Below, piece after piece: positions 18,671 through 30,957 of a stretch of 64,000 bases of DNA (its first letter is position 1; each line of letters begins with the position of its first letter). A program made the position numbers and the translations under genes. The DNA lies in assembly GCA_002104905.1 (NCBI GenBank), contig MCFE01000051.1, positions 124,001 through 188,000 on the forward strand. The letters run 5' to 3'. The stretch comes from Basidiobolus meristosporus CBS 931.73. Its lineage: Eukaryota; Fungi; Basidiobolomycota. Below the pieces are notes generated by a model. That model was not told the DNA's origin and searched no databases. It saw nothing but the letters and a program-made list of their open reading frames with translations.

Positions 18671-19873
18671 ATGGAGAGCTCCATGTTCATTCTATTGCTT
18701 TGGAGCATCAGCTCGGTCCTTGGAAACCAGACCCACCCACCCCAATCCACATCTCTGCCGACACTACCTTCCGGCTCCTTGCCCATTGGTGTCCTGGCTC
18801 CTCTGAACCCCGTAGCCATCAAGCAGATTGACTTCTCCCAGGTTCCCAACATCCCGGTCAAGGTCCCGGGTGCCGGGACATGTCCTGGGGTATGCCAGCC
18901 AGATGGCTGCGAGAACTGTTGGGAATCATGTGGGGTCTGCAAGAGACAGACTGATATCTGGTCTTGTCCAATACCCAACAACCTGGGACTTACCTTTGAC
19001 GACGGCCCAGGGTGAGTGAGAGGGTTTGCGAAGTATCCTGTGCAATTGGAGCTAAACGATCATTTCACTTCCTCTAGATCTGACACACCCAAGCTTTTGG
19101 ATATTTTAGCCGCCGAAGGGGTCAAAGCGACCTTCTGCGTCATTGGCGTGCTCCTGCAAAGCCCCACCCACGCGGAGACGATGCGTAGGATCTACAAAGA
19201 GGGACACACGATCTGCTCCCATACCTGGTCACATCCTCACCTGATGTCGCTAACGAACGAGCAGATCGTCTCCGAATTGAAAGCTACCGAGGATATCATT
19301 GTCAAGACGATCGGCGTGAAGCCAAGATACCTCCGACCACCCTGTAAGAGCAACATGATCCCTGCAATGTACGTCTGAAATAACTCACCCCATCTGTTTA
19401 CCTAGTCGGTGAAGTGGACGACCGAGTCCGTGCGATAGCGGAGGCCATGGGCTACAAAATACTGATGTGGAATCTGTAAGTCACTTTACGCTACCCCATT
19501 CCATTTGAACCAAACCAACCAAATGTCTAGAGACACGCTGGATTGGAAGTTCTGGCAGACCAATGCTAGCGCCATCGGTGATTCAGTTCAGCAGAACCTC
19601 GCAGCGTTGAGTAACCCGACCCGGAGTTGGGTAACGTTGATGCACGATATCTATTCTGCCTCCGTTTCGCAAGTCCCCGCCATGATCCACACCGCCAAAC
19701 AAATGGGCCTGGGCCTCCAGTCGGCTGGCCAATGCCTGGGGGATCCTTGGGTGCCAGTACAAGACGCTGTAAATCGAACCCAGACTACCAAGTCATCCAG
19801 CTCAAAGATCCTCACATTGCCAAGTTCCATGTACTGGTCAATATTGTTTATCTATGCTGTATACACTCACTAG
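18671..19873 (+). CDS. Chitin deacetylase / polysaccharide deacetylase (CE4, NodB), secreted, probably GPI-anchored; 3 introns
   Basis: Signal peptide, Cys-rich N-region, TFDDGP, HTWSHPHL, RPPFG (intron-split), DTLDW, LMHD, S/T-rich then hydrophobic C-terminus. Confidence 0.93.
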
Positions 19874-20290: not shown

Positions 20291-23200
20291 CTACTTCGTT
20301 TTGAAATAAAAGTCCGGATTCCCCCAGTAACAGGTAATCGTGTTCTCATTGATGGTATTTGGATCGGAGGATTCAAACACCCTAGGCTTCGAGAACAGGG
20401 TTACCTTCGGGGGCTGAATAATAGCCTTGCGCTGAATGGCGCCCCGTGAGAGTAACACCTGCAGGATGTCTTGTAGCTCACACCGGGACATCACCAAGGC
20501 AAATTTCCTATGGATGTTCGATTCGTACACGCCAGGCTTCTGGATGATATAGCCAAGTACCGCCTCCGAGCAGGCCCGTAGGACGGTCTCTACCGTGTTA
20601 CCGTTGATGTCGTACCACATCCGGGCTGGCGCATACCTATGAACTGTGATCCGGGAAAACGGGTCACGGACTCTAGGGGACCGCTCTAATGAAGAGAAAT
20701 CCAATTCTGGTGCAGGCGTTCCTGTAGATCGTATTGGGGTTTGGCTTCTGGAATAGGAGCAGACGGTTCGCTGTGCTGTGTCCACCATCCAGAAAGAGAG
20801 GAACTCTTGGGTGACATATCTAAATGTGTTGAATCCAACGCGCCCGATCAGAGGGGGTGAGGCCGATTCAAGTTTTCCGAGATATGCTTGAAGTATGGCA
20901 TCATCCATAACGATGTCCTCATTTTTGATGGCCTTTGCCAAAGACAGTAGTGTGATCCCAAGCTTCCCACTGGTCTTGATACAGTCGAACACACGCTGTA
21001 CGTTGAATCGGTCCTCGTCGACCTCATATTGGCTCTTAACTTCTTCGATAAGGAGATTCTCGTCTATATCCGATGAATCGTCTATGGAGGGAGTAATGAA
21101 GGAGGACTTGTACCTTTTGGGGGTTGGGCTGTCGATGCTGTGGGAATCCTCTAGTGGACGTTTTCTAGTCAGGTTGACTGTGCCCGGGATGGCTTTGATC
21201 GGGCTTGGTGTCTGCTCATCTATTTCGGCGATCCTTTCGACAATGGGAGTAATGCACACGGAGAAATCCAGTCTTCGATGGTCGATTTTCCGACTCTTAT
21301 GATTGGGGACAATTTGCGCCTCATTCACCGACTCTGGATATACCGGTGAAAGGGTGATTTTGGAGTTAGACAGCAGGTTCAGCAAACAGGCCATCGTTCC
21401 ACTGTTGGCCAAAGGAGAGAATACCAGGGGACCTTTGATATGGTGATGGAAAGCTGTGGCTTGAGGAAGCATTCTCTCCGGGAAAGTTCCAGTCAAGACG
21501 GAGAGGAACTTGTCTGACACATGAAATCCGCGTCCGGGGATTCGTCTATTGAACCCTCCCTTGACTTTCACAATAGTTCCCGCTTCTTTGGCATCTTCCA
21601 AGGCCTCAACAATCTGATTGTGGGGGAAGATGTTCAGTATGGAGAACGCGTGTGAGGAGTCGTACTGATCTTCAGGGGTCATTAGGATCATCTTCACCAA
21701 GGCCTTGATAAGTTCCCTTTGGATTTTGTTTTCATCGACGTCCTCGGACACCAAGTCCAGATTGTCGTGCAGTTTGGTGCGGAGAATAAATGGATGGGCG
21801 TACATGACTGTCATTTTACCACGGAGTGATACTGCAAATTCGACTTGATCTTCGAAGTAAACGTCTTCCCGGTGAGTGGAGGACACGTAGGATGGATCGA
21901 AGATCGACTCGAGAATGGCGGGATTTCTGGGTAGGGGATACGAAGGGATAGGGTCATGGGTCGGAAGATTGCGCAAAGCGCTCATAAAGTATTCTAGTTG
22001 CCCTTTCAAGTCGAAATCTATCATATCTACATCATCTTCGTCGACAAACGCCCCAGTCTTCAGGCCTTCATGATAAAGGGCCTCCCAGTGAATAACTAGC
22101 GAGTTGACCCTGTCCTGATTCCGAGTATTTCGGAGTAACACATTGATTCTGCGACGGCAGTTTTCACTTACACGCTCAGGAAAGACTTGGGTAATTGATG
22201 CCCAGAGAAACTTTGATCTTCGCGCACGGTATCTTAGGATGACGTACGCATGAAGCAGCATCTCATCTTCCTGGGGTGACCAGTACGAGCGGTATCTCCG
22301 CGAGATAGATTCGTACTGTGATTCGAATCTCTCCTCATCACCGATAACGGGCAGGTTCTCTTCATTCTCCATCAAACCTGGGTTGGTAATAGGCTCTTGT
22401 TGCTTCCGGAGTTTTTCGCGTTGAGACCTTCTTCCGATGGATGACTGTGACGATTCCCCAGGAGTGTTCTTTCCCCTTCTCCTGCTCTTGTTTGGAGGGG
22501 TACTGTCTGAACCAAAGGAGGCCGATGCGGCATTTTTCAAAAGCCTCTCTCGAATCGTATCCCTGCGCTTCTTTCGAAAAGCGGACTCCCCATCTGGCAT
22601 CTTTGAACTAGCGATCAGCCCTTCGTGGGTATGGTGCTTCCTCGTCGCCTCCAAGGCTGCAGATGCTTGCCTTTCACGTTTCTTCATCAGTTTGCGCTCA
22701 TGATCGTCCTGGATTCTTTTGAAGAAAAACTTCACTCGTTGGACATGCAAACTCAGCTTGGCAGCAATTTGGCGACATTTGACTTCATCTTCCAATGGAG
22801 TCAGTCCCTTCCGGCGATTAACATAAGACTCCAAGACAGATCTCTGATGGGTAGTAAACGGATATGACGATTGCCAGTTCCGAGGGTTTGTGATATGATA
22901 CAGTGGATCATTCTTGGCATCCCCATCTTCTGCTTTCTCCGCCTTACCCCGCTTGGGAGTTGATTTGGAGCCATCTTCGCCACTCTCATCCGCGCTGTCG
23001 CCGCTATTTCCGGCTTCATTGTCACTTCCGACGTTGGCTCTTTCAGCCACCTTCTGTAGTGCTACGTACTGTAGCTCGCTCCAGTATATAGTAACATCCT
23101 GTATGGTTTCCAACACATATTCACGAATGACGTTGCGATTGGCCCCCGGGAAAGAGTAGTCGAACATGCGGACGTGTAACGGCAGTTGATAAGCCGAGCT

Positions 23201-26200
23201 GACGATTTGAAAGGAGGTTTCAAACTCGCCGTCATTCATCTCATCCAGGCCTTCATAGATTACATTGCCCTGCTCGTCAAAGTCTCTAGCAACAGGTTTC
23301 AAAATCTCCAGAGCAACCAAAATATCCAACAGCTGCTTGAGTTGACGTCGATATTTGTAGTTCCCACCGAAGATTGCTGTCCGGATGGAGTGCGGCAGAT
23401 CGATCACTCGAGTCGACAGATCGTTGTTACCTTTGATGTAGTTTGTCAACTCGGTATTTTGCGTGGTGTGACCAATGATTTTCAAGTAAAGGTCCAGAGT
23501 TAGGTCGGTAAACAGCATCGACGTTTGGAAGACTCTTGCGGAATCATCGAGCGCATCCTGGTCCAATTGGCTGTTGATCTTGCTTATCAGGAACTGATGC
23601 AAGAGTTTTGCGCGGACCATTTTGGCATTTATCCAACCATAGTCTTGGGCCGTGGAGAGCCACCACATATCGCTAGAAGGATTGGATTTCGCGGGGGTCG
23701 TAGGGCTGGTGTCTAGACGTGACTGAGAGCTGGTTGGGGTTTGTACCGTGCTGCCTATTCTCTTCCTCATATCCTCCAACCTCTCCACTTCAATATTCTC
23801 CTCCTCGATTTTGGGGGGCTTGAATGTACTGCCAACCAGCATTATCCGATCCCGCATCAACGCAACATACTCTTTAACCTCCGGACTTTGCGGTGTTAGT
23901 GAAGGATGAAGAAACAGGATCTTTGTGTTGTAAGTCCCGTTGAGGAGAGGGAGCTTTACGGTATACTGTGTGAGTAGATTCTCTTCTTCCAAGGATGTAG
24001 CCGTACGAGCCAGTGTTCTTTTATCTATCGTATGAGGCAAATGGGCACCGGTTCCCAGCTGAGATGCCAGCAGATCCTGGTATGATTTGATGAGCAAGTA
24101 ACTCAGTTCGAGGATTTTCTTCTCCTCTAAAAGCTGGAGTAGGAGTTTTCGACGTCTAACCGCAGTGATAGATTTCAGATGGGAGGTACTACTTGCACTC
24201 GCCACAGGGACAATCTTTCGATCAGGTGTAACAGGAACCTTATCTACCGCGGTATCACCATTGGTCTTGACCGGCTCTTCGTTCTCGCTTTCTTCAACTG
24301 CCGGTCCTTTGCCCTTACACCCTTTGCTGCAGAACCAGTTCCCTTTGGGGATCGCTTTCAGCGGCGGGTTAGAGCAGTACGTATGCTGGCCCTCGTTACA
24401 GTGATCACAAAGGAGAATGTGGCTATCATCATCACCCTTGTGACAAACCTTACAGACAATCTCATCCACATCCATACGATCATCGTTGGGTGTTGGAGTG
24501 GACGTACGGGTGGACACAGCTGCGTGCTTCGAAGAGTCGCGACGGCTGCGTGAGGGTGTGTTCCCATTCAACACCTTTCTCATTTCGGAAGTGATACCAT
24601 CCTCTTCTTCCAGCCGCTTAAATGCTTCAGTAGAATAGTAACGATACCGCCTCTCCCGTCCAACAAATTCAGCTACACGGCAAATCCCGACTTGGCCAGC
24701 ATCCGCCGGTGGTTTAAGCAGTCTGGTCAGGATCTTCTGCAATAGGCGGTTGTTGATATTACTAAGAGATTCTTGTATTGCCTGGGAGAGTGGGAAAGGG
24801 TATTAGTAAGTTGACTCGGCTCCTCTTGTAAGATGTCTGCACTTCCATTACCCCAGCTGTTATTCCATCATCACCAGATAGTTGGATCAACCGATACACT
24901 TGATACTCGAACGGTAAATCCGCAAGAACACCTTTCTGAATTATCGGTGCCGCTTGGTCTCGCGCTGGCGATGGCTCTGATACAAAGTCTTCACTAATAT
25001 CCACCAGTCGTTCGCGGATTCTAAGTGCTATGGTTGCCCATGGTTAAGATTGCCTCTGTTTTTGCACCCGGATGATCATCGGCAGCTTACCTTGTGGTTT
25101 GGACGGGATCAGGGGACTTGTATTATTTTGCGAATTCGGTACATAAGGCCTCAGCAATCTAAAACACCTGTCGTAGCCCTTGTCCTTTCTTGGTACGTTT
25201 ATCCTTTCGATGTATTTCTGCTTTACCAGGATATCAATGGTGCGGTTGAACCACTTCCGCTGTTGTTTGACTGTAGCCGTGTCTAAACCCTAACGTTGAG
25301 ACTCGATCAATCGGGATTCTGAACACACCTGGACATGAATATACTTACTAATGCATCCATCAGGTCTTGAGCCACCATCACTTTGTTTAGCGCCTGGCCC
25401 AATATTTCCGTTAATTTTTGCCTTACGAGGTCGCTGTGAAATGAGACCCCCGTATCCGGCGAAGACGGGTTGTTTTCGGAGTTTTCATAGTGAAAACGTA
25501 TGGAATCTTTCTCTGATTCGAGGGTAGAAACAGGATCCCCTCGTTCGCAGCTAGATGGCATCGTGGCTAGGTAGGCGGGGTTCAAATGGGCATAGCGAAT
25601 GTGAAGGCACAAGTTAGTGTAAGTGCCTCGCGTTACCACCGGACACTTGACTCTAGATGCACGTCAAAAGGATTAGCCCGCGTCCAATGAGAAACATGGT
25701 GAGACTAAGCGTACACAAGCTTCATTTCGCATAGCACTTTAATAAAATGGAACACAGATCTTGGATCCATCGACAAATCCTTGGCTATATCGGCTTGGGT
25801 TGCGCCCAATGTTCGGCCGCGTGCGATACGGCGTAATACCGAGGATATCATGGAGGAGAACTCTTTACTGGGCTATTCGATCCGAATCAAGCGATTGAGG
25901 GTCAGTAAGATCGTATCATAATGCTTCCTTCGGGAATATGAGAAAATACCCACACCTTGGTGGCCATAGAGGGCTTTTCGTTGCAAATCTGCGCTGGCAA
26001 CTACCTTCAGCTTACTACCGTAATATTGCTCCACCTCGTCCAGACTCATACTTTTGATCTCGGTTTTAAAGGCGGCCGTTTTCGTGGAGGGTTTTTCGGG
26101 GGATTTCTAAGAAACAACAGTCAAATTAGCGTTGAGCCTCCGAACCCATCGTATGTGAGCAGCTTGTAGACGTACTGTATTCTTCGGCTTCCTTCCCCGT

Positions 26201-26534
26201 GTTTTCCCCTTATTGGAAGCCTCCTCTTCGACAAGATTGATAAACGTCACTTCGTCCATTCTTCGTAAAATCTGCCATATATAAGATTTCATGGAAATGT
26301 CAAACACTTGAGGGCCCTCAGGATCTGGACCGGATTTCTTTCGACGTGAATTGGCGCACGCCGTGCTATAATATTCCTCAAAGAATTTCCATATGCTCGG
26401 TAAGGGGCAACCTGAAGTCAAAAAGAACCTTCGGTTGGTACGGTGGCAGACTGTCATCTGGTGGTGTAATCCAACTTACCACTGTCACCTTCTACGCCGA
26501 TTTCTTCCAACACGTATAGCAATAGATCATCCAT
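20291..26534 (-). CDS. TFC3: RNA polymerase III factor TFIIIC B-block-binding large subunit (Tfc3/Sfc3/GTF3C1) with an inserted PHD finger; several 5' exons plus one ~4.5-kb exon
   Basis: Start MDDLLLYVLEEIGVEGDSG, B-block-domain-like RIARGRTLGATQADIAKDLSMDPRSVFHFIKVL...TNLCLHIRY, IDKRTLARTATSLEEE, GWINAKMVRAKLLHQFL, YWSPQEDEMLLHAYVIL, IPGRGFHVSDKF, C-terminal GYIIQKPGV. Confidence 0.88.
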
Positions 26535-27019
26535 TGTCTAATCTGTGTTGAAGCTGCAGCAAATCCAAACAGAAAAACGGAGGGTAAAAATTCCGAGTTA
26601 AAACACGAGATTCATGATGAATCAAACAAAAAATATCATTTCTGATATATGGCTCAACGCATACAATCATCCCTGGATCGAAAAATTTAGCAGTCCACCC
26701 AGATTTGGCCAATGCGATTGAGGGATCCGCATGCCATATGCGACAGCTTGGAGTCCATCAACCCATCTTGGATTTGGGTCCAAGAGAAAGGTGGGTTGGG
26801 GATTGAAGCTTGATCTATGCAGATGGATGGTGGTAACAATGTCTAGTTAGCTCAGAAGCTCTTTATTTTACTGCTTTCCGATCTAGACGAATCAACCGTA
26901 GTGAGTAAATACGTGAAAAGGTGAACCAAAGATTATTAATATACATGATGAAGGGATCATATTCAAATGAAACGGTAGTGTATTGGAGGTGTTCCAGCGA
27001 ATATATAGGATTCTTAGGA

Positions 27020-30000
27020 TCACTTGGACCATTGCTTAGCAATGGACTGGAGGGCGTTCTGTGTTCTAGGGTTATCAACCGATCCCAACTTCCACAGAAA
27101 TGCGAAATCGCTCTGGGCAGCCAAGGCAGTTTCGTTTTGAATGCTGGTGATGGCTTGTTTCATGTGTTGATTTGCCTCGAATTTCTTGGCGGCCTCCTCG
27201 GCTTTATCTACAATGGCTCTAGGCACTCCAGCCATGTTGGCCACATTCATACCATAACTCTTGGGGCACGAGCCCTCGGTAAGTTTGTAAAGAAAGGTGA
27301 CTTCCTTACGTTCTTCATCCACTTGACAGCTCATATGCATTAAAGCGATATTCTTGGTTTTTTCCATCTCGGTTGTCAGCATGCCGTAGTGTGTGGAGAA
27401 GAGACCGAGACAGCCAACATACGTTGACAGATAGTGAAGAACAGAGTAGGCGATGGCGTACCCATCAAACGTACTGGTACCACGACCGAGCTCATCGAGG
27501 ATTACCATGGATCTGGGTGTCGCCTCACGCAGGATCTTGGAGGTTTCGCTGAGCTCCACCATAAATGTCGATTGTCCGGCGAGGATGTTGTCATTGGCAC
27601 CGATACGAGTGAAGATTCGATCGAACGTGGTCATACGGCAGCGGCGTGCAGGGACGTAGCATCCCAGCTGGGCCATGATGATTGCAACGCATGTTTGTCG
27701 TAGGAGTGTGGACTTACCACCCATATTGGGACCCGTCAGCAGAATGATGTTGGGCTTCTGGCCCCCGAGATAGGTGTCATTGGGAATGAAGTCAGTGGCA
27801 ACACCCGGAACGACACATGGGTGTCGTAGCTCTTCAAACTCCAAGACGCTCTCGGGGCCTTCGACGAACTCCGGTCGTGTGTATGGTTCGCCCAAGGATA
27901 TTGAGCTCTTGGCCAGGCTGAACAAGCAATCGAGCTCCGATATCACACTGACAGCCTTGCTCCATTGAGGGTAATTGGCGTCGAATTTCTGATACATCCT
28001 GCTCTGGATGTTGCTTAGGATGTTGCTGCGGGTCTCCTGCGCCTCATTCAAAGATTGGACCAACGATTTGGTGGTCATGTTCCAGTAGCGGTTGACGGCT
28101 TTGGTCTGGGAGAGTTTGATCCAGTTGTCGGGGACCTTGATATTCTTTGGCACTTCAATCTGGTAGATCTCCTTCCCAAGGTCCTTGTACTCGATTTTAG
28201 AGGAGTTGAGCTTCTTGCGGCAATCCTTGAGGTGGAAGGCAAACTGGTCCTCGATATCCTGAAGTTGTTTCACGACCGCATCGTAATCATCCTCTACGCC
28301 AAGGTGTGGCACCACGGTACCTTCCTTCTCAGCCTTCTCATGGTCGAATGCCTCGTTGAAGTATTTGATTGTGTCGGTGAGATCCGGGTAGCTGTTCAAC
28401 AGAAACACCAATCTTTTGGAGGTGAAGGTGGATGATTTCTTCTTCATCTTGTTCATGACCTCTCCGATCGCCTCAAAGGAGCGGAGAACGTTCAACAACT
28501 CCTTCAATTTACAGGTGCCGGCATGGATACGACTGATAATACGCTCGAGATCCGGAAGCGAGGTGAAGATAACCGAGAGCTCATCCTGCAGCTCAAAGTC
28601 AGCGTTGATGTTTTCGATAGCATCCAACCGTTCGTTGATCTGTTCAGCGGAGCGGAGTGGGTGACAGAGCCACTTCTTGAATAGTCTCTTTCCGAACGGA
28701 GTGGAGCATCGGTTCAAGAGTTTGAACACCGTTCCTTCTTCGCCGCCGTCAAAACTATTCTCGAAAATCTCCAAATTGACCAAGGTTTGCCCGTCCAGAA
28801 TCAATGATGTCATTTGGTGAATGGGGTCATAGGCGTGAATATTCTTGAGTGACAACAACTCCTTATCCAACTTCAAAGAACGAAGATACCACGTCAACCC
28901 ACCAAGCGCCGACAGCGCCAGATGCTTGTCCTGGAACGCCACGAGAGCAGCAGGCCATTTGCCGCCATCGGGGCCTGTTGACTGCTCATTACCCTCGCCA
29001 GCCTGGTCAAAGTAACCGCCGCGACGTAAGGCATCCAAGGTGGTGACACTATCCCAGAACTCGGTCTCCGGTGTAAGATAGTTCCATACTGGGGCGTTTA
29101 CCGAGTTTTTGAGGACCTTCAGGGTGCGTTGACTGATCCCATTCTTCTCCAGGATTACCTCCTTGGGTTTGATCTGAAGAATCAGCGTCTCGAAGCGGGT
29201 CCTCTCCAGGTCATCTTCGAAACAGCATATATAAAACGCTGCGGTAGCCGTGTCCACGAAGCAAATCCCCAACGAAGGCAATGCATTGTCACCGGCGCAC
29301 TCCTCCTTGATAGCCATACAATAAGTGGACATCTCGTTGTGTAACAGACCGGAATCGACCAATGTGCCCACGGTCAAGATACTGGTGAGCTCACGTCGAA
29401 TGATCTTCTCCTCTTTCTTTTGGCTGGAACGCTCGCGCATACTCTTCCCGATAGCCGTCTCCATTTGTTCGACCTTGGCTACTTTGTAGCCTTTGGCGAT
29501 AAACTGGGAGGCCCAGTGATCAAAGGACGACTCAGGGACCCCAACCATGCGCATGTTCACTCTGTCGGTCATCTTGAGGTCAAACTCTTGGTGACCGATA
29601 TCGGCGTCTTTTTCGTAGAGTTCGTAAAACTTGCCTTTCTTGAAGAAAACGACCGTGTCGAAATGGCTCGCCTTGATCTCCCAGAACTGCTTCTCGAACG
29701 GGGTGAATAGGTTCCATGCGGAGGACGGGATTTTCAAGGTTCTAGGGTCGTAGTCAGGGTCGCCCACGGATTTCCCGTTGGCATCCCGAACGTCCACCAG
29801 CCAACTGTATCTAGTCTCGTTCTTTTCCTTTTTCTTGTCGTTCCGCATGGGGCTAGCCTTGGATGGGGAGTCGAGAAAGCTAGCCGAACGGCGTGAGGTA
29901 GGGGACATAAACTGTTGGAATTTTGCTTTGGTGGTCCTCGGCGTGGTGGGCGTACGAGGGGCTATTGTGATGACTTTATTGGAGGTTTCTGGCTCTGGGC

Positions 30001-30469
30001 TAGCATCCTCGTCGTAAGGTAAATCCGGTTCAGGTTCAGAGTCTTGTTCCGCCGGTTTGAACTCCTCCTCGTCGTCAGAATTGGCGATCCTTCGAAGTTT
30101 GCGAGACGGGCCCTTTGGCGTGGAAACCTTGACAGGCACCACCTCTTTATCCTCTTCATCGGATTCGAAGTAAGTGACTCTTTTCTTGGCCCGTGAGGAA
30201 GCAAGTGGTGCGATTTCGTCAATCTCCATACGTTCAGGCGATTCGCTTGGGACCTTCCCGACCGGGCTTGATTCCTGAGTGCTGGAAGAAGAGTTGTTGC
30301 TACTCTTAGAACGTGGCACAGCCCTGTCTTGGGTGGAATCTTGGATTCCGGCTGAGCGCTCTACATTCTCCTTCGTAGGTTTGGTGTTGGCAGCGGATTT
30401 TGTCTCGGGAGCAGGAGACTTGAAAAACGAAAAGAGCGTCCTTTGGGTTTTTGGCGTGGAATTACTCAT
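27020..30469 (-). CDS. MSH6: DNA mismatch repair protein MSH6 (MutS family), intronless
   Basis: PIP-box-like QRTLFSFF, DPDYDPRTLKIP, FFKKGKFYELYE, TGPNMGGKSTLLRQ, DELGRGTSTFDG, STHY, GSCPKSYGMNVA. Confidence 0.98.
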   Translation of the reverse strand: MSNSTPKTQRTLFSFFKSPAPETKSAANTKPTKENVERSAGIQDSTQDRAVPRSKSSNNSSSSTQESSPVGKVPSESPERMEIDEIAPLASSRAKKRVTYFESDEEDKEVVPVKVSTPKGPSRKLRRIANSDDEEEFKPAEQDSEPEPDLPYDEDASPEPETSNKVITIAPRTPTTPRTTKAKFQQFMSPTSRRSASFLDSPSKASPMRNDKKKEKNETRYSWLVDVRDANGKSVGDPDYDPRTLKIPSSAWNLFTPFEKQFWEIKASHFDTVVFFKKGKFYELYEKDADIGHQEFDLKMTDRVNMRMVGVPESSFDHWASQFIAKGYKVAKVEQMETAIGKSMRERSSQKKEEKIIRRELTSILTVGTLVDSGLLHNEMSTYCMAIKEECAGDNALPSLGICFVDTATAAFYICCFEDDLERTRFETLILQIKPKEVILEKNGISQRTLKVLKNSVNAPVWNYLTPETEFWDSVTTLDALRRGGYFDQAGEGNEQSTGPDGGKWPAALVAFQDKHLALSALGGLTWYLRSLKLDKELLSLKNIHAYDPIHQMTSLILDGQTLVNLEIFENSFDGGEEGTVFKLLNRCSTPFGKRLFKKWLCHPLRSAEQINERLDAIENINADFELQDELSVIFTSLPDLERIISRIHAGTCKLKELLNVLRSFEAIGEVMNKMKKKSSTFTSKRLVFLLNSYPDLTDTIKYFNEAFDHEKAEKEGTVVPHLGVEDDYDAVVKQLQDIEDQFAFHLKDCRKKLNSSKIEYKDLGKEIYQIEVPKNIKVPDNWIKLSQTKAVNRYWNMTTKSLVQSLNEAQETRSNILSNIQSRMYQKFDANYPQWSKAVSVISELDCLFSLAKSSISLGEPYTRPEFVEGPESVLEFEELRHPCVVPGVATDFIPNDTYLGGQKPNIILLTGPNMGGKSTLLRQTCVAIIMAQLGCYVPARRCRMTTFDRIFTRIGANDNILAGQSTFMVELSETSKILREATPRSMVILDELGRGTSTFDGYAIAYSVLHYLSTYVGCLGLFSTHYGMLTTEMEKTKNIALMHMSCQVDEERKEVTFLYKLTEGSCPKSYGMNVANMAGVPRAIVDKAEEAAKKFEANQHMKQAITSIQNETALAAQSDFAFLWKLGSVDNPRTQNALQSIAKQWSK

Positions 30470-30957
30470 TGGGTCAAGCAATATACCAAGCAAAAGAAGT
30501 GGTTGATATCTTTGATTTGTGGTAAGTAGTATTCAGAAATGCGGGATCTATTTTTTGTTTTGATAATGCCATCCCTCTCACAAGCAAACACGGTCATGTT
30601 TATTTAGAGGAGCCATCAGTGATTGGCTGGGGCCTTGATGAACTGCGGCGCCCATACTACCTACCATCAGATTACCAGCAATGTATGCGATCTATGTGTG
30701 GAATATGAAGCTGAACTCGCGTCCACCATTGCCTGGACCATAGGAAATCATACGAATCTAGTTTATTAGGATGGTATGTGTTGAGGGATAAATGCCTTCC
30801 AACTGGCTGAGCACTGATCATCAGGTAGCCCAACCAAATGTATCTATAGAGAAAGTAAGACAGCAAGGCCAACACGTTAAGGCTAAAATACAACATTGCG
30901 AGGATATCAGATGTATTCCACGCTTACTAGAGACGTTAGGCCAGCTCATGCCAGGAT

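What the first reader, a model, noticed from the sequence alone, without database searches (positions are those of the whole stretch)
24317..24454. PHD finger embedded in the TFIIIC B-block-binding subunit: a possible histone-reading Pol III factor
Seen: the 4.4-kb exon of the Tfc3/GTF3C1 homolog contains an in-frame canonical C4HC3 PHD (CKVCHKGDDDSHILLCDHCNEGQHTYCSNPPLKAIPKGNWFC), flanked by disordered linkers and lying downstream of the B-block domain. Established: S. cerevisiae Tfc3, S. pombe Sfc3 and human GTF3C1 have winged-helix arrays and, to my knowledge, no annotated PHD. The sequence resembles BAZ2A/KDM5-PHD1-type fingers, whose acidic residues before the first Cys (here DDRMDVDEIV) favour unmethylated H3K4. 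Inference: in this lineage TFIIIC may couple B-box recognition to nucleosome state at tRNA genes or ETC/insulator sites. This is the best candidate in the window for an undescribed mechanism.
Basis: partly seen in the sequence, partly recalled or inferred. Interest (0 to 1): 0.75.

Follow-up and report, generated by a model that had tools for sequence, protein, structure and literature searches.

The report
PHD finger inside fungal TFIIIC subunit
The large DNA-binding subunit of the RNA polymerase III factor TFIIIC in the fungus Basidiobolus really carries a histone-reader-type PHD zinc finger, but the same insert is found in about thirty chytrid fungi, so it is an old, unstudied feature of early fungi and not a peculiarity of this lineage.

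Summary
Observation confirmed. Window 24317-24454 (minus strand) encodes a complete C4HC3 PHD finger (Pfam PF00628, E 1e-10). It lies in frame in the last exon of an 8-exon gene (26534-20291). My splice model equals the deposited 1923-aa protein of Basidiobolus meristosporus CBS 931.73 exactly. The protein is a full Tfc3/tau138/GTF3C1 orthologue. The PHD sits in the disordered loop between WH4 and eWH, the two domains that clamp the B-box in the yeast and human structures.

BAZ2A/B, KMT2D and KDM5 PHD1 are the best solved matches, there is no methyl-lysine cage Trp, and an acidic patch is present.

"In this lineage" is wrong. The same WH4-PHD-eWH layout occurs in B. ranarum and about 30 chytrid orthologues across at least six orders. 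They share a rare C-x3-C last zinc pair. The PHD is absent from the Glomeromycotina, Mortierellomycotina, Mucorales, Blastocladiomycota, Dikarya and animal orthologues I sampled.

The likeliest history is an ancestral fungal insert kept in Basidiobolus and lost elsewhere. Reading of unmodified H3 tails is inferred, not shown. I found no paper describing it, and no RNA run was listed. The scan noted this stretch once before (s1-233695, same DNA).

The parts
20291..26534 (-). Tfc3/tau138/GTF3C1 orthologue gene, 8 exons, 1923 aa. Exons: 26534-26480, 26411-26176, 26106-25954, 25872-25715, 25652-25349, 25289-25091, 25027-24852, 24781-20291 (stop included).
   Evidence: The splice model from GT..AG sites gives one open frame and is identical to deposited protein P0001. 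Introns are 59-81 nt with GTAAGT-like donors.
25975..26534 (-). WH1 (PF23704 WH_GTF3C1_N), residues 1-141; includes introns 1 and 2
   Evidence: E 3e-6
25586..25839 (-). WH2 = B-block_TFIIIC domain (PF04182), residues 160-223; includes intron 4
   Evidence: E 5e-16
25122..25423 (-). WH3 (PF24538 DUF7599), residues 278-358; includes intron 5
   Evidence: E 5e-17
24611..24947 (-). WH4 (PF24657 DUF7646), residues about 396-484, with the conserved GRERRYRYYS motif; includes intron 7
   Evidence: AF2 pLDDT about 90. Corresponds to yeast WH4 334-416 and human WH4 367-437, which contact the B-box.
24467..24610 (-). Linker 1, residues 485-532, predicted disordered
   Evidence: pLDDT below 50. dN 0.22 against B. 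ranarum, with 15 of 48 residues changed.
24311..24466 (-). PHD finger, residues 533-584. The zinc ligands Cys537 to Cys582 map to 24454-24317.
   Evidence: Pfam PF00628. pLDDT 91-95. BAZ2A PHD E 2e-16. Foldseek BAZ2A/B rmsd 0.8-2.4 A. dN 0.032.
24182..24310 (-). Linker 2, residues 585-627, starting with the basic KGKG tail; predicted disordered
   Evidence: pLDDT below 50. dN 0.24, with 17 of 43 residues changed.
23828..24181 (-). eWH (PF24101 eWH_GTF3C1), residues 628-745
   Evidence: pLDDT 91-98. Foldseek hits 8cli_A, 9gc3_A and 5aim_B.
23063..23542 (-). DUF7647 (PF24658), residues 841-1000
   Evidence: below Pfam's cut-off (24.3 against 27 bits)
21230..22300 (-). DUF6581 (PF20222), residues 1255-1611, the C-terminal part that in human and yeast belongs to tauA (WH5-8); starts with a Myb-like stretch
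   Evidence: E 5e-54.

Best explanation
The gene is the single-copy-looking orthologue of the B-box-binding subunit of TFIIIC (Tfc3/tau138/GTF3C1) of Basidiobolus meristosporus. The loop joining WH4 and eWH, two domains that close around the B-box, holds an independently folded PHD zinc finger on two flexible tethers of about 45 residues. In yeast and human that loop is a long stretch lying between the assigned WH4 and eWH domains.

The insert is homologous to the one in chytrid Tfc3 proteins. It most likely dates from an early fungal ancestor, was kept in Basidiobolus, and was lost in Mucoromycota, Blastocladiomycota, Dikarya and some chytrids.

By sequence and fold it belongs with PHD fingers that bind the free N-terminus of histone H3 with unmethylated Lys4 (BAZ2A/B, KDM5 PHD1). 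The inferred mechanism is that tauB, once bound to a B-box, also holds the H3 tail of a neighbouring nucleosome. This would add avidity or nucleosome-state sensitivity at tRNA genes and at TFIIIC-only sites.

Shown here: gene structure, domain identity, position, fold, purifying selection, and distribution. Inferred: common origin of the insert, and H3 binding with its specificity and consequence.
For: - Identity and position: Pfam domains in Tfc3 order, with the PHD between DUF7646 (WH4) and eWH in Basidiobolus, Geranomyces and Synchytrium; alignment.
- Fold: the AF2 model gives three confident beads and two disordered linkers. Foldseek top hits are human and yeast tauB chains 8cli_A, 9gc3_A and 8ffz_B, then BAZ2B/BAZ2A PHD at 45-51% identity and rmsd 0.8-2.4 A.
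- Selection: against B. ranarum, with synonymous sites saturated, PHD dN is 0.032. WH4 is 0.048 and eWH 0.011, while the two linkers are 0.22 and 0.24.
- Distribution: 28 of 82 Tfc3-like representatives have the PHD at this site. Named ones are chytrids of Spizellomycetales, Rhizophlyctidales, Chytridiales, Rhizophydiales, Synchytriales, Polychytriales and Monoblepharidomycetes.
- Single origin: the eight best non-Basidiobolus BLAST hits of the Basidiobolus PHD are all chytrid Tfc3 PHDs, ahead of every other PHD pulled from 1.84 billion representatives. The last zinc pair is C-x3-C in 21 of 23 complete Tfc3 PHDs but in only 5 of 195 other PHD domains.
- Vertical descent of the gene: Basidiobolus Tfc3 groups with Glomeromycotina, Mucorales and Blastocladiomycota (SH-aLRT 99), apart from chytrids (99).
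- Reader type: all top PDB sequence hits are unmodified-H3 readers (BAZ2A/B, KDM5A/B/D PHD1, ATXR5, CHD4, PHF21A, DPF3, AIRE, UHRF1) and none is of ING/BPTF/TAF3 type. The BAZ2A peptide-contact positions D1688, L1692, L1693, P1714 and G1716 correspond to Asp546, Leu550, Leu551, Pro572 and Gly574. The position of the methyl-lysine Trp is Gly558.
- Geometry: WH4 and eWH both contact the B-box in yeast and human structures.
Against: - No binding data exist, and no RNA or protein evidence could be obtained.
- The exact acidic-wall residue (BAZ2A E1689) is Ser547 in both Basidiobolus species. Only 12 of 23 complete Tfc3 PHDs have Asp or Glu there.
- Some chytrid copies look degenerate (Batrachochytrium, Entophlyctis helioformis, Polychytrium, Gaertneriomyces; Powellomyces and Thoreauomyces are incomplete). 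The function is therefore dispensable or changeable.
- On the gene tree, presence or absence needs 4 changes at minimum. A losses-only history needs 5, so parsimony does not favour retention over a second gain.
- Other Zoopagomycota were not sampled.
- The representative search lists only the best 150 of 9113 hits, so PHD-bearing orthologues in distant eukaryotes cannot be excluded.
Confidence: 0.6

Rival explanations
1. The PHD is a protein-protein or structural module that does not read histones. It might bind the N-terminus or a basic segment of another Pol III factor or of TFIIIC itself, or act as an intramolecular latch between WH4 and eWH.
For: PHD fingers with non-histone ligands exist: UHRF1 PHD binds PAF15 (6iiw, listed), and BAZ2B has a histone-mimicking linker (title of PMC5663869). 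The acidic-wall residue is not conserved in Basidiobolus, and several chytrid copies have lost the acidic patch while keeping the zinc ligands. The finger sits between two domains that rearrange on DNA binding.
Against: All the closest solved relatives bind the H3 N-terminus. The backbone-contact positions and the P-x-G-x-W loop are kept. No candidate partner is known.
Confidence: 0.22
2. Basidiobolus acquired its PHD independently of chytrids, either by a second insertion at the same loop or by transfer of only this segment. In that case the shared architecture is convergent or mosaic.
For: On the Tfc3 tree Basidiobolus lies among PHD-less lineages, and a two-gain history needs 4 events against 5 for losses only. 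All the closest full-length relatives (Glomeromycotina) lack the PHD, and their alignments to P0001 break at residues 493-631.
Against: The insert is at the same site. The Basidiobolus PHD is most similar to chytrid Tfc3 PHDs and not to any other PHD. They share the rare C-x3-C last pair, a K-G-K tail and an acidic N-flank. No intron flanks the finger that would suggest exon shuffling.
Confidence: 0.13
3. The finger reads methylated H3K4, the mark of active chromatin, as ING/BPTF/TAF3-type PHDs do.
For: This is the historic default for PHD fingers. From my own knowledge, active Pol III genes in animals lie in H3K4me3-marked chromatin.
Against: There is no Trp at the cage position (Gly558). No aromatic-cage PHD appears among the 60 best PDB hits. 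Acidic-patch PHDs and cage-Trp PHDs are nearly mutually exclusive (PMC5415848).
Confidence: 0.04
4. The finger is an annotation or assembly artefact, or an untranslated relic.
For: No RNA run was listed.
Against: It lies in a single 4.49-kb open exon. An 87%-identical orthologue in B. ranarum has an intact PHD at the same residues in conserved synteny. There is strong purifying selection on the PHD while its flanks drift.
Confidence: 0.01

Closest known systems
Yeast tau138 (Tfc3) and human TFIIIC220 (GTF3C1), as in cryo-EM structures 9GC3, 8CLI and 8FFZ
   Same: The domain order is WH1-WH2(B-block)-WH3-WH4-loop-eWH, then a long linker and the C-terminal tauA-anchoring region. Foldseek places the WH4-eWH model on these chains. 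The loop length (143 aa) is similar to yeast (about 133) and human (about 174).
   Different: The WH4-eWH loop of the model organisms has no folded domain in their published domain maps. Here it holds a 52-residue PHD finger.
Chytrid Tfc3 orthologues (for example Spizellomyces punctatus, Rhizoclosmatium globosum, Geranomyces variabilis, Chytriomyces confervae, Synchytrium endobioticum)
   Same: They share the WH4-PHD-eWH architecture, the C-x3-C last zinc pair, the basic tail and the acidic flank. They give the best BLAST matches to the Basidiobolus PHD.
   Different: The rest of the protein is more distant (about 25-39% identity) than the PHD-less Glomeromycotina orthologues (about 33-42%). 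Most chytrids have Asp or Glu at the acidic-wall position, where Basidiobolus has Ser.
BAZ2A/TIP5 and BAZ2B PHD fingers (4Q6F, 5T8R, 4QF3); KDM5A/B/D and Lid PHD1
   Same: Sequence identity is 45-51% and rmsd 0.8-2.4 A. They share an acidic patch before beta-1, the L-L-C-D strand and the P-x-G-x-W-F-C loop, and they lack a cage Trp.
   Different: The host protein and context differ. The last zinc pair is C-x3-C instead of C-x2-C, and the acidic-wall residue E1689 is replaced by Ser. H3 binding has not been measured.
Glomeromycotina Tfc3 orthologues with AT hooks in the same loop
   Same: They are the closest full-length relatives of the Basidiobolus protein, and their WH4-eWH loop also carries a small accessory nucleic-acid/chromatin motif.
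   Different: They have one or two KRGRP[RK] AT-hook motifs instead of a PHD, and no zinc ligands (0-3 Cys in 9 of 10 loops, 6 in Cetraspora).

Membership tests
TFIIIC B-box-binding subunit (Tfc3/tau138/Sfc3/GTF3C1) | B-block_TFIIIC winged helix (WH2, PF04182) | tested here: met
   58.8 bits against a cut-off of 22, residues 160-223; also seen on exon 4 alone
TFIIIC B-box-binding subunit (Tfc3/tau138/Sfc3/GTF3C1) | Array WH1-WH4 plus extended WH in the family's order | tested here: met
   PF23704, PF04182, PF24538, PF24657 and PF24101 occur in order. Foldseek hits 8cli_A, 9gc3_A, 8ffz_B and 5aim_B.
TFIIIC B-box-binding subunit (Tfc3/tau138/Sfc3/GTF3C1) | C-terminal region that anchors tauA (DUF6581, WH5-8) | tested here: met
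   PF20222, E 5e-54, residues 1255-1611
TFIIIC B-box-binding subunit (Tfc3/tau138/Sfc3/GTF3C1) | Binds B-box DNA within a six-subunit TFIIIC | not testable with these tools
   Needs biochemistry. Orthology is supported by reciprocal similarity to named GTF3C1/tau subunits.
PHD finger (PF00628) | C4HC3 ligand pattern with cross-brace spacing | tested here: met
   Cys537, 540, 552, 555, His560, Cys563, 578, 582. The last pair is C-x3-C, which is unusual.
PHD finger (PF00628) | Profile score above the curated threshold | tested here: met
   37.9-41.9 bits against 24
PHD finger (PF00628) | PHD fold | tested here: met
   AF2 pLDDT 91-95. Superposes on BAZ2A/B, ATXR5, KDM5B and DPF3 PHDs at rmsd 0.7-2.4 A.
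PHD finger (PF00628) | Binds two zinc ions | not testable with these tools
   Needs metal analysis
Unmodified-H3-tail ('acidic wall') PHD subclass: BAZ2A/B, KDM5 PHD1, DPF3, MOZ, UHRF1 | No Trp at the methyl-lysine cage position | tested here: met
   Gly558 lies two residues before His560. Across complete Tfc3 PHDs this position is Gly in 15 of 23 and Trp only in Batrachochytrium.
Unmodified-H3-tail ('acidic wall') PHD subclass: BAZ2A/B, KDM5 PHD1, DPF3, MOZ, UHRF1 | Asp or Glu at the acidic-wall position (BAZ2A E1689) | tested here: not met
   This position is Ser547 in both Basidiobolus species. The neighbouring D1688 equivalent (Asp546) and Asp544-545 are acidic. It is met in 12 of 23 complete Tfc3 PHDs, mostly chytrids. 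I therefore say the finger resembles this subclass and do not file it as a strict member.
Unmodified-H3-tail ('acidic wall') PHD subclass: BAZ2A/B, KDM5 PHD1, DPF3, MOZ, UHRF1 | Backbone-contact residues for H3 A1-K4 (BAZ2A L1692, L1693, P1714, G1716) | tested here: met
   Leu550, Leu551, Pro572 and Gly574 align with them
Unmodified-H3-tail ('acidic wall') PHD subclass: BAZ2A/B, KDM5 PHD1, DPF3, MOZ, UHRF1 | Binds the H3 N-terminal peptide, weakened by K4 methylation | not testable with these tools
   Needs ITC, NMR or a peptide array

The most novel reading that the evidence does not exclude
The ancestral fungal TFIIIC carried a histone H3 tail reader inside its B-box clamp, so promoter recognition by the Pol III machinery was wired directly to the state of the neighbouring nucleosome. 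The module survives in chytrids and Basidiobolus. It was swapped for AT hooks in Glomeromycotina and lost before the origin of the model fungi, which is why it has never been studied.
Probability: 0.35. Interest if true: 0.6.

Novelty: new variant of a known kind. Interest (0 to 1): 0.5.

Why it matters
TFIIIC is known as a sequence-specific DNA binder. It also marks chromatin boundaries and ETC sites, yet no histone-reading domain appears in the domain maps of the yeast and human large subunits. A reader module built into the B-box clamp, conserved across chytrids and Basidiobolus, would be a direct physical link between Pol III promoter recognition and nucleosome state. It also gives a natural system for asking how TFIIIC deals with nucleosomes, because from my own knowledge Spizellomyces can be transformed.

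The finding also serves as an annotation warning. Because of this finger, some orthologues are named "Lysine-specific demethylase 5B" or "Methyl-CpG-binding domain-containing protein 9". The interest is moderate, because the architecture is already visible in public protein records and the function is inferred only.

Tried and rejected
- RNA evidence: the look-up of sequencing runs on 23800-26600 listed no RNA run, so read laying could not be used.
- The protein-atlas search on residues 395-745 gave no usable hit.
- A mixture-model tree on 1836 columns did not finish in time. The LG+G4 quick tree was used instead, and its long-branch warnings concern chytrids, not Basidiobolus.
- dN/dS ratios could not be given for the folded domains because synonymous sites are saturated between the two Basidiobolus species. 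dN values are compared instead.
- My first regular expression for the ligand pattern was too strict and failed on nearly all sequences. It was corrected.
- An attempt to name 12 unnamed PHD-less representatives with one alignment search named only Calcarisporiella plus a few Dikarya and animal orthologues. Other Zoopagomycota therefore remain unsampled.
- Literature searches for TFIIIC/Tfc3/GTF3C1 with PHD, chytrid or Basidiobolus found nothing relevant. The one paper holding all of the terms only lists TFC3 as a HAT, and Matsutani 2014 does not mention a zinc finger.
- Rejected: whole-gene transfer from a chytrid (tree) and exon shuffling (no flanking introns).
Full report
**1. The observation**

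On the minus strand, window 24317-24454 translates to a 46-residue string running from the first to the eighth zinc ligand of a C4HC3 finger. Pfam's PHD model scores 37.9-41.9 bits against a cut-off of 24, depending on how much flank is given. The finger lies in an uninterrupted reading frame of 1483-1496 codons.

I built the upstream exons from GT..AG sites alone. Only one combination keeps the frame open: eight exons from 26534 to 20291, with introns of 59-81 nt and GTAAGT-like donors. Its translation is identical over all 1923 residues to a deposited protein, K493DRAFT_334426 of Basidiobolus meristosporus CBS 931.73. The window is therefore from that fungus, and the finger is part of the accepted gene model.

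**2. The host protein**

The protein has, in order:
- WH_GTF3C1_N
- B-block_TFIIIC
- DUF7599
- DUF7646
- PHD
- eWH_GTF3C1
- DUF7647
- DUF6581

This is the Tfc3/tau138/GTF3C1 architecture with one extra domain.

In the yeast cryo-EM paper, tau138 has WH1 1-97, WH2 108-172, WH3 185-262, WH4 334-416 and eWH 550-640. WH2, WH3, WH4 and eWH all contact the B-box (PMC11724288). In human TFIIIC220, WH4 is 367-437 and eWH is 612-714. WH2 and WH4 form part of the rigid tauB core, while WH3 and eWH become ordered on DNA binding (PMC11811891).

In Basidiobolus, WH4 ends at about residue 484 and eWH starts at about 628. The PHD (533-584) therefore sits inside the WH4-eWH loop, within the B-box clamp. It is not in the long tauA-tauB linker further downstream.

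**3. Fold**

I predicted residues 395-745 with AlphaFold2 from a 28-sequence alignment. The model has three confident beads: WH4 at pLDDT about 90, the PHD at 91-95, and eWH at 91-98. They are separated by two stretches with pLDDT below 50.

Foldseek against the PDB returns the tauB chains 8cli_A (human), 9gc3_A (yeast) and 8ffz_B first. BAZ2B and BAZ2A PHD fingers follow at 45-51% identity and rmsd 0.8-2.4 A.

**4. Is it maintained?**

B. ranarum has an 87%-identical orthologue with the PHD at the same residues. It lies in the same neighbourhood, with a MutS homologue upstream and a polysaccharide deacetylase downstream.

Synonymous sites between the two species are saturated, so I compared dN values:

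| Region | dN | Residues changed |
|---|---|---|
| PHD | 0.032 | 3 of 52 |
| WH4 (exon-8 part) | 0.048 | 4 of 57 |
| eWH | 0.011 | 3 of 118 |
| Linker 1 | 0.22 | 15 of 48 |
| Linker 2 | 0.24 | 17 of 43 |

The finger is as constrained as the DNA-binding domains beside it, while its tethers drift. No RNA run was listed for this stretch, so direct evidence of expression is missing.

**5. Distribution**

I searched a profile of WH4-PHD-eWH against 1.84 billion cluster representatives. It gave 9113 hits at E up to 0.001, of which the best 150 are listed. Sub-profiles classified those hits, together with the earlier word-search hits, as follows:
- 82 Tfc3-like proteins, of which 28 have a PHD between WH4 and eWH and 54 have none.
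- 75 proteins that match only the PHD part.

The named PHD-bearing proteins are all chytrids apart from the two Basidiobolus species:
- Geranomyces variabilis and G. michiganensis
- Spizellomyces
- Fimicolochytrium
- Gaertneriomyces
- Powellomyces and Thoreauomyces (incomplete fingers)
- Borealophlyctis
- Rhizophlyctis
- Zopfochytrium
- Obelidium
- Entophlyctis
- Chytriomyces (two species)
- Podochytrium
- Physocladia
- Dinochytrium
- Phlyctochytrium
- Rhizoclosmatium
- Polychytrium
- Batrachochytrium
- Synchytrium
- Gonapodya

Named orthologues without a PHD are:
- ten Glomeromycotina
- four Mortierellomycotina
- Mucorales
- Calcarisporiella
- four Blastocladiomycota
- Piromyces
- the chytrids Quaeritorhiza, Blyttiomyces, Clydaea and Hyaloraphidium
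- Mycena, Rhodotorula and Talaromyces
- a hemichordate GTF3C1 and a vertebrate GTF3C1

Most of these loops contain 0-1 cysteine, so nearly all of the absences are real and not missed weak fingers. Rhizopus, Cetraspora and the vertebrate protein have 6 Cys but give no PHD hit.

There are two limits on this survey. No other Zoopagomycota orthologue was recovered. Only the best 150 hits could be inspected, so distant eukaryotes are not excluded.

**6. One origin or two?**

In a tree of 33 full-length orthologues (1451 columns, LG+G4), Basidiobolus groups with Glomeromycotina, Mucorales and Paraphysoderma (SH-aLRT 99). Chytrids form the other side (99). The gene as a whole was therefore inherited vertically and not taken from a chytrid.

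Presence or absence of the PHD needs at least 4 changes on this tree, and a losses-only history needs 5. Parsimony therefore does not decide. The sequence features do point one way:
- The eight best non-Basidiobolus BLAST hits of the Basidiobolus finger are all chytrid Tfc3 fingers. They rank ahead of all 75 PHD-only proteins that the profile pulled from the whole library.
- The last zinc pair is C-x3-C in 21 of 23 complete Tfc3 fingers, against 5 of 195 other PHD domains in the same set. In those other domains C-x2-C is the rule, at 166 of 195.
- The insertion site, an acidic stretch before Cys1 and a basic K-G-K tail are also shared.

I therefore favour a single ancient insertion with repeated loss. 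I put that at about 0.75, conditional on the finger being functional.

**7. What kind of PHD?**

The best solved sequence matches are:
- BAZ2A (E 2e-16) and BAZ2B
- a KMT2D finger
- Lid, KDM5B, KDM5D and KDM5A PHD1
- ATXR5, CHD4, PHF21A, DPF3, AIRE and UHRF1

All of these recognise the H3 N-terminus without K4 trimethylation. No ING/BPTF/TAF3-type finger appears among the 60 listed.

Bortoluzzi et al. (PMC5415848) report three relevant points:
- BAZ2A holds H3 A1-K4 through backbone hydrogen bonds with D1688, L1692, L1693, P1714 and G1716.
- An "acidic wall" Asp/Glu (E1689), together with D1688, is needed for full affinity.
- This acidic residue is almost mutually exclusive with the cage Trp of methyl-lysine readers.

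In the alignment these positions correspond to Asp546, Leu550, Leu551, Pro572 and Gly574. The Trp position is Gly558.

The acidic-wall position itself is Ser547 in both Basidiobolus species, preceded by Asp544-546. Among 23 complete Tfc3 fingers it is Asp or Glu in 12. The finger therefore resembles the unmodified-H3 subclass closely but fails one strict defining residue in this species. I say it works like that subclass and do not file it as a member.

**8. Mechanism**

The following is shown:
- a folded, selected PHD finger on two flexible tethers of about 45 residues
- a location between two domains that clamp the B-box

The following is inferred. When tauB is bound to a tRNA gene or a TFIIIC-only site, the finger can reach the H3 tail of an adjacent nucleosome. 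It would add avidity, or make binding sensitive to tail state, with K4 methylation expected to weaken the contact.

The closest PHD-less relatives, the Glomeromycotina, carry one or two KRGRP[RK] AT-hook motifs in the same loop in 9 of 10 species. This fits the idea that the loop is a platform for accessory chromatin or DNA contacts.

Several chytrid copies argue that the role is modulatory and can change. Batrachochytrium, Entophlyctis helioformis and Polychytrium have lost the acidic patch, and Batrachochytrium has a Trp at the cage position.

**9. Novelty**

No paper in the searchable library connects TFIIIC, Tfc3 or GTF3C1 with a PHD finger, chytrids or Basidiobolus. The structural papers describe only winged helices.

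The architecture is, however, already visible in public records. Several orthologues are auto-named "Zinc finger PHD-type domain-containing protein". Two are mis-named after PHD-bearing families: Gonapodya as "Lysine-specific demethylase 5B" and a Geranomyces copy as "Methyl-CpG-binding domain-containing protein 9".

My verdict is an undescribed variant of a known factor. It is ancient and widespread in zoosporic fungi, it is not specific to Basidiobolus, and its function is inferred only. The same stretch was noted once before by this scan (s1-233695, same DNA).

Noticed in passing
P0003, P0004, P0005, P0028, P0179, P0181-P0184 (Glomeromycotina Tfc3 orthologues), WH4-eWH loop: Nine of ten Glomeromycotina orthologues carry one or two KRGRP[RK] AT-hook motifs in the same loop where Basidiobolus and chytrids have the PHD. 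Geosiphon has none.
   Followed up: partly
P0093 (Gonapodya sp. JEL0774), P0185 (Geranomyces variabilis): These Tfc3 orthologues are deposited under the names 'Lysine-specific demethylase 5B' and 'Methyl-CpG-binding domain-containing protein 9'. The names apparently come from the embedded PHD finger, although both proteins have the TFIIIC domains.
   Followed up: partly
P0144 (Batrachochytrium), P0063 (Entophlyctis helioformis), P0046 (Polychytrium), P0032 (Gaertneriomyces): These PHD copies are divergent. The zinc ligands are kept but the acidic patch is lost. Batrachochytrium has Trp at the methyl-lysine cage position and a longer Cys2-Cys3 loop, which may mean a changed ligand.
   Followed up: no
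window 27023-30493 (-) and about 19016-19378 (+); L001 1-2402 and 9722-11015: A MutS-family mismatch-repair homologue (all five MutS domains) lies upstream of the Tfc3 gene and a polysaccharide deacetylase lies downstream. The order is the same in B. ranarum.
   Followed up: partly
window 20291-24781 against L001: Synonymous sites are saturated between B. meristosporus and B. ranarum although the proteins are 87% identical. The two 'species' are therefore anciently diverged.
   Followed up: no
P0202 (vertebrate GTF3C1), WH4-eWH loop, residues 386-623: The loop holds six cysteines in 238 residues with no PHD hit. I did not check whether any zinc-binding remnant exists.
   Followed up: no
just beyond the window's end (earlier notes s1-233517, s1-233569, s1-233547, s1-233694): Earlier first-reader notes describe arrays of truncated non-LTR retroelements with telomere-like junctions starting about 228 bases beyond this window. 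I did not examine them.
   Followed up: no
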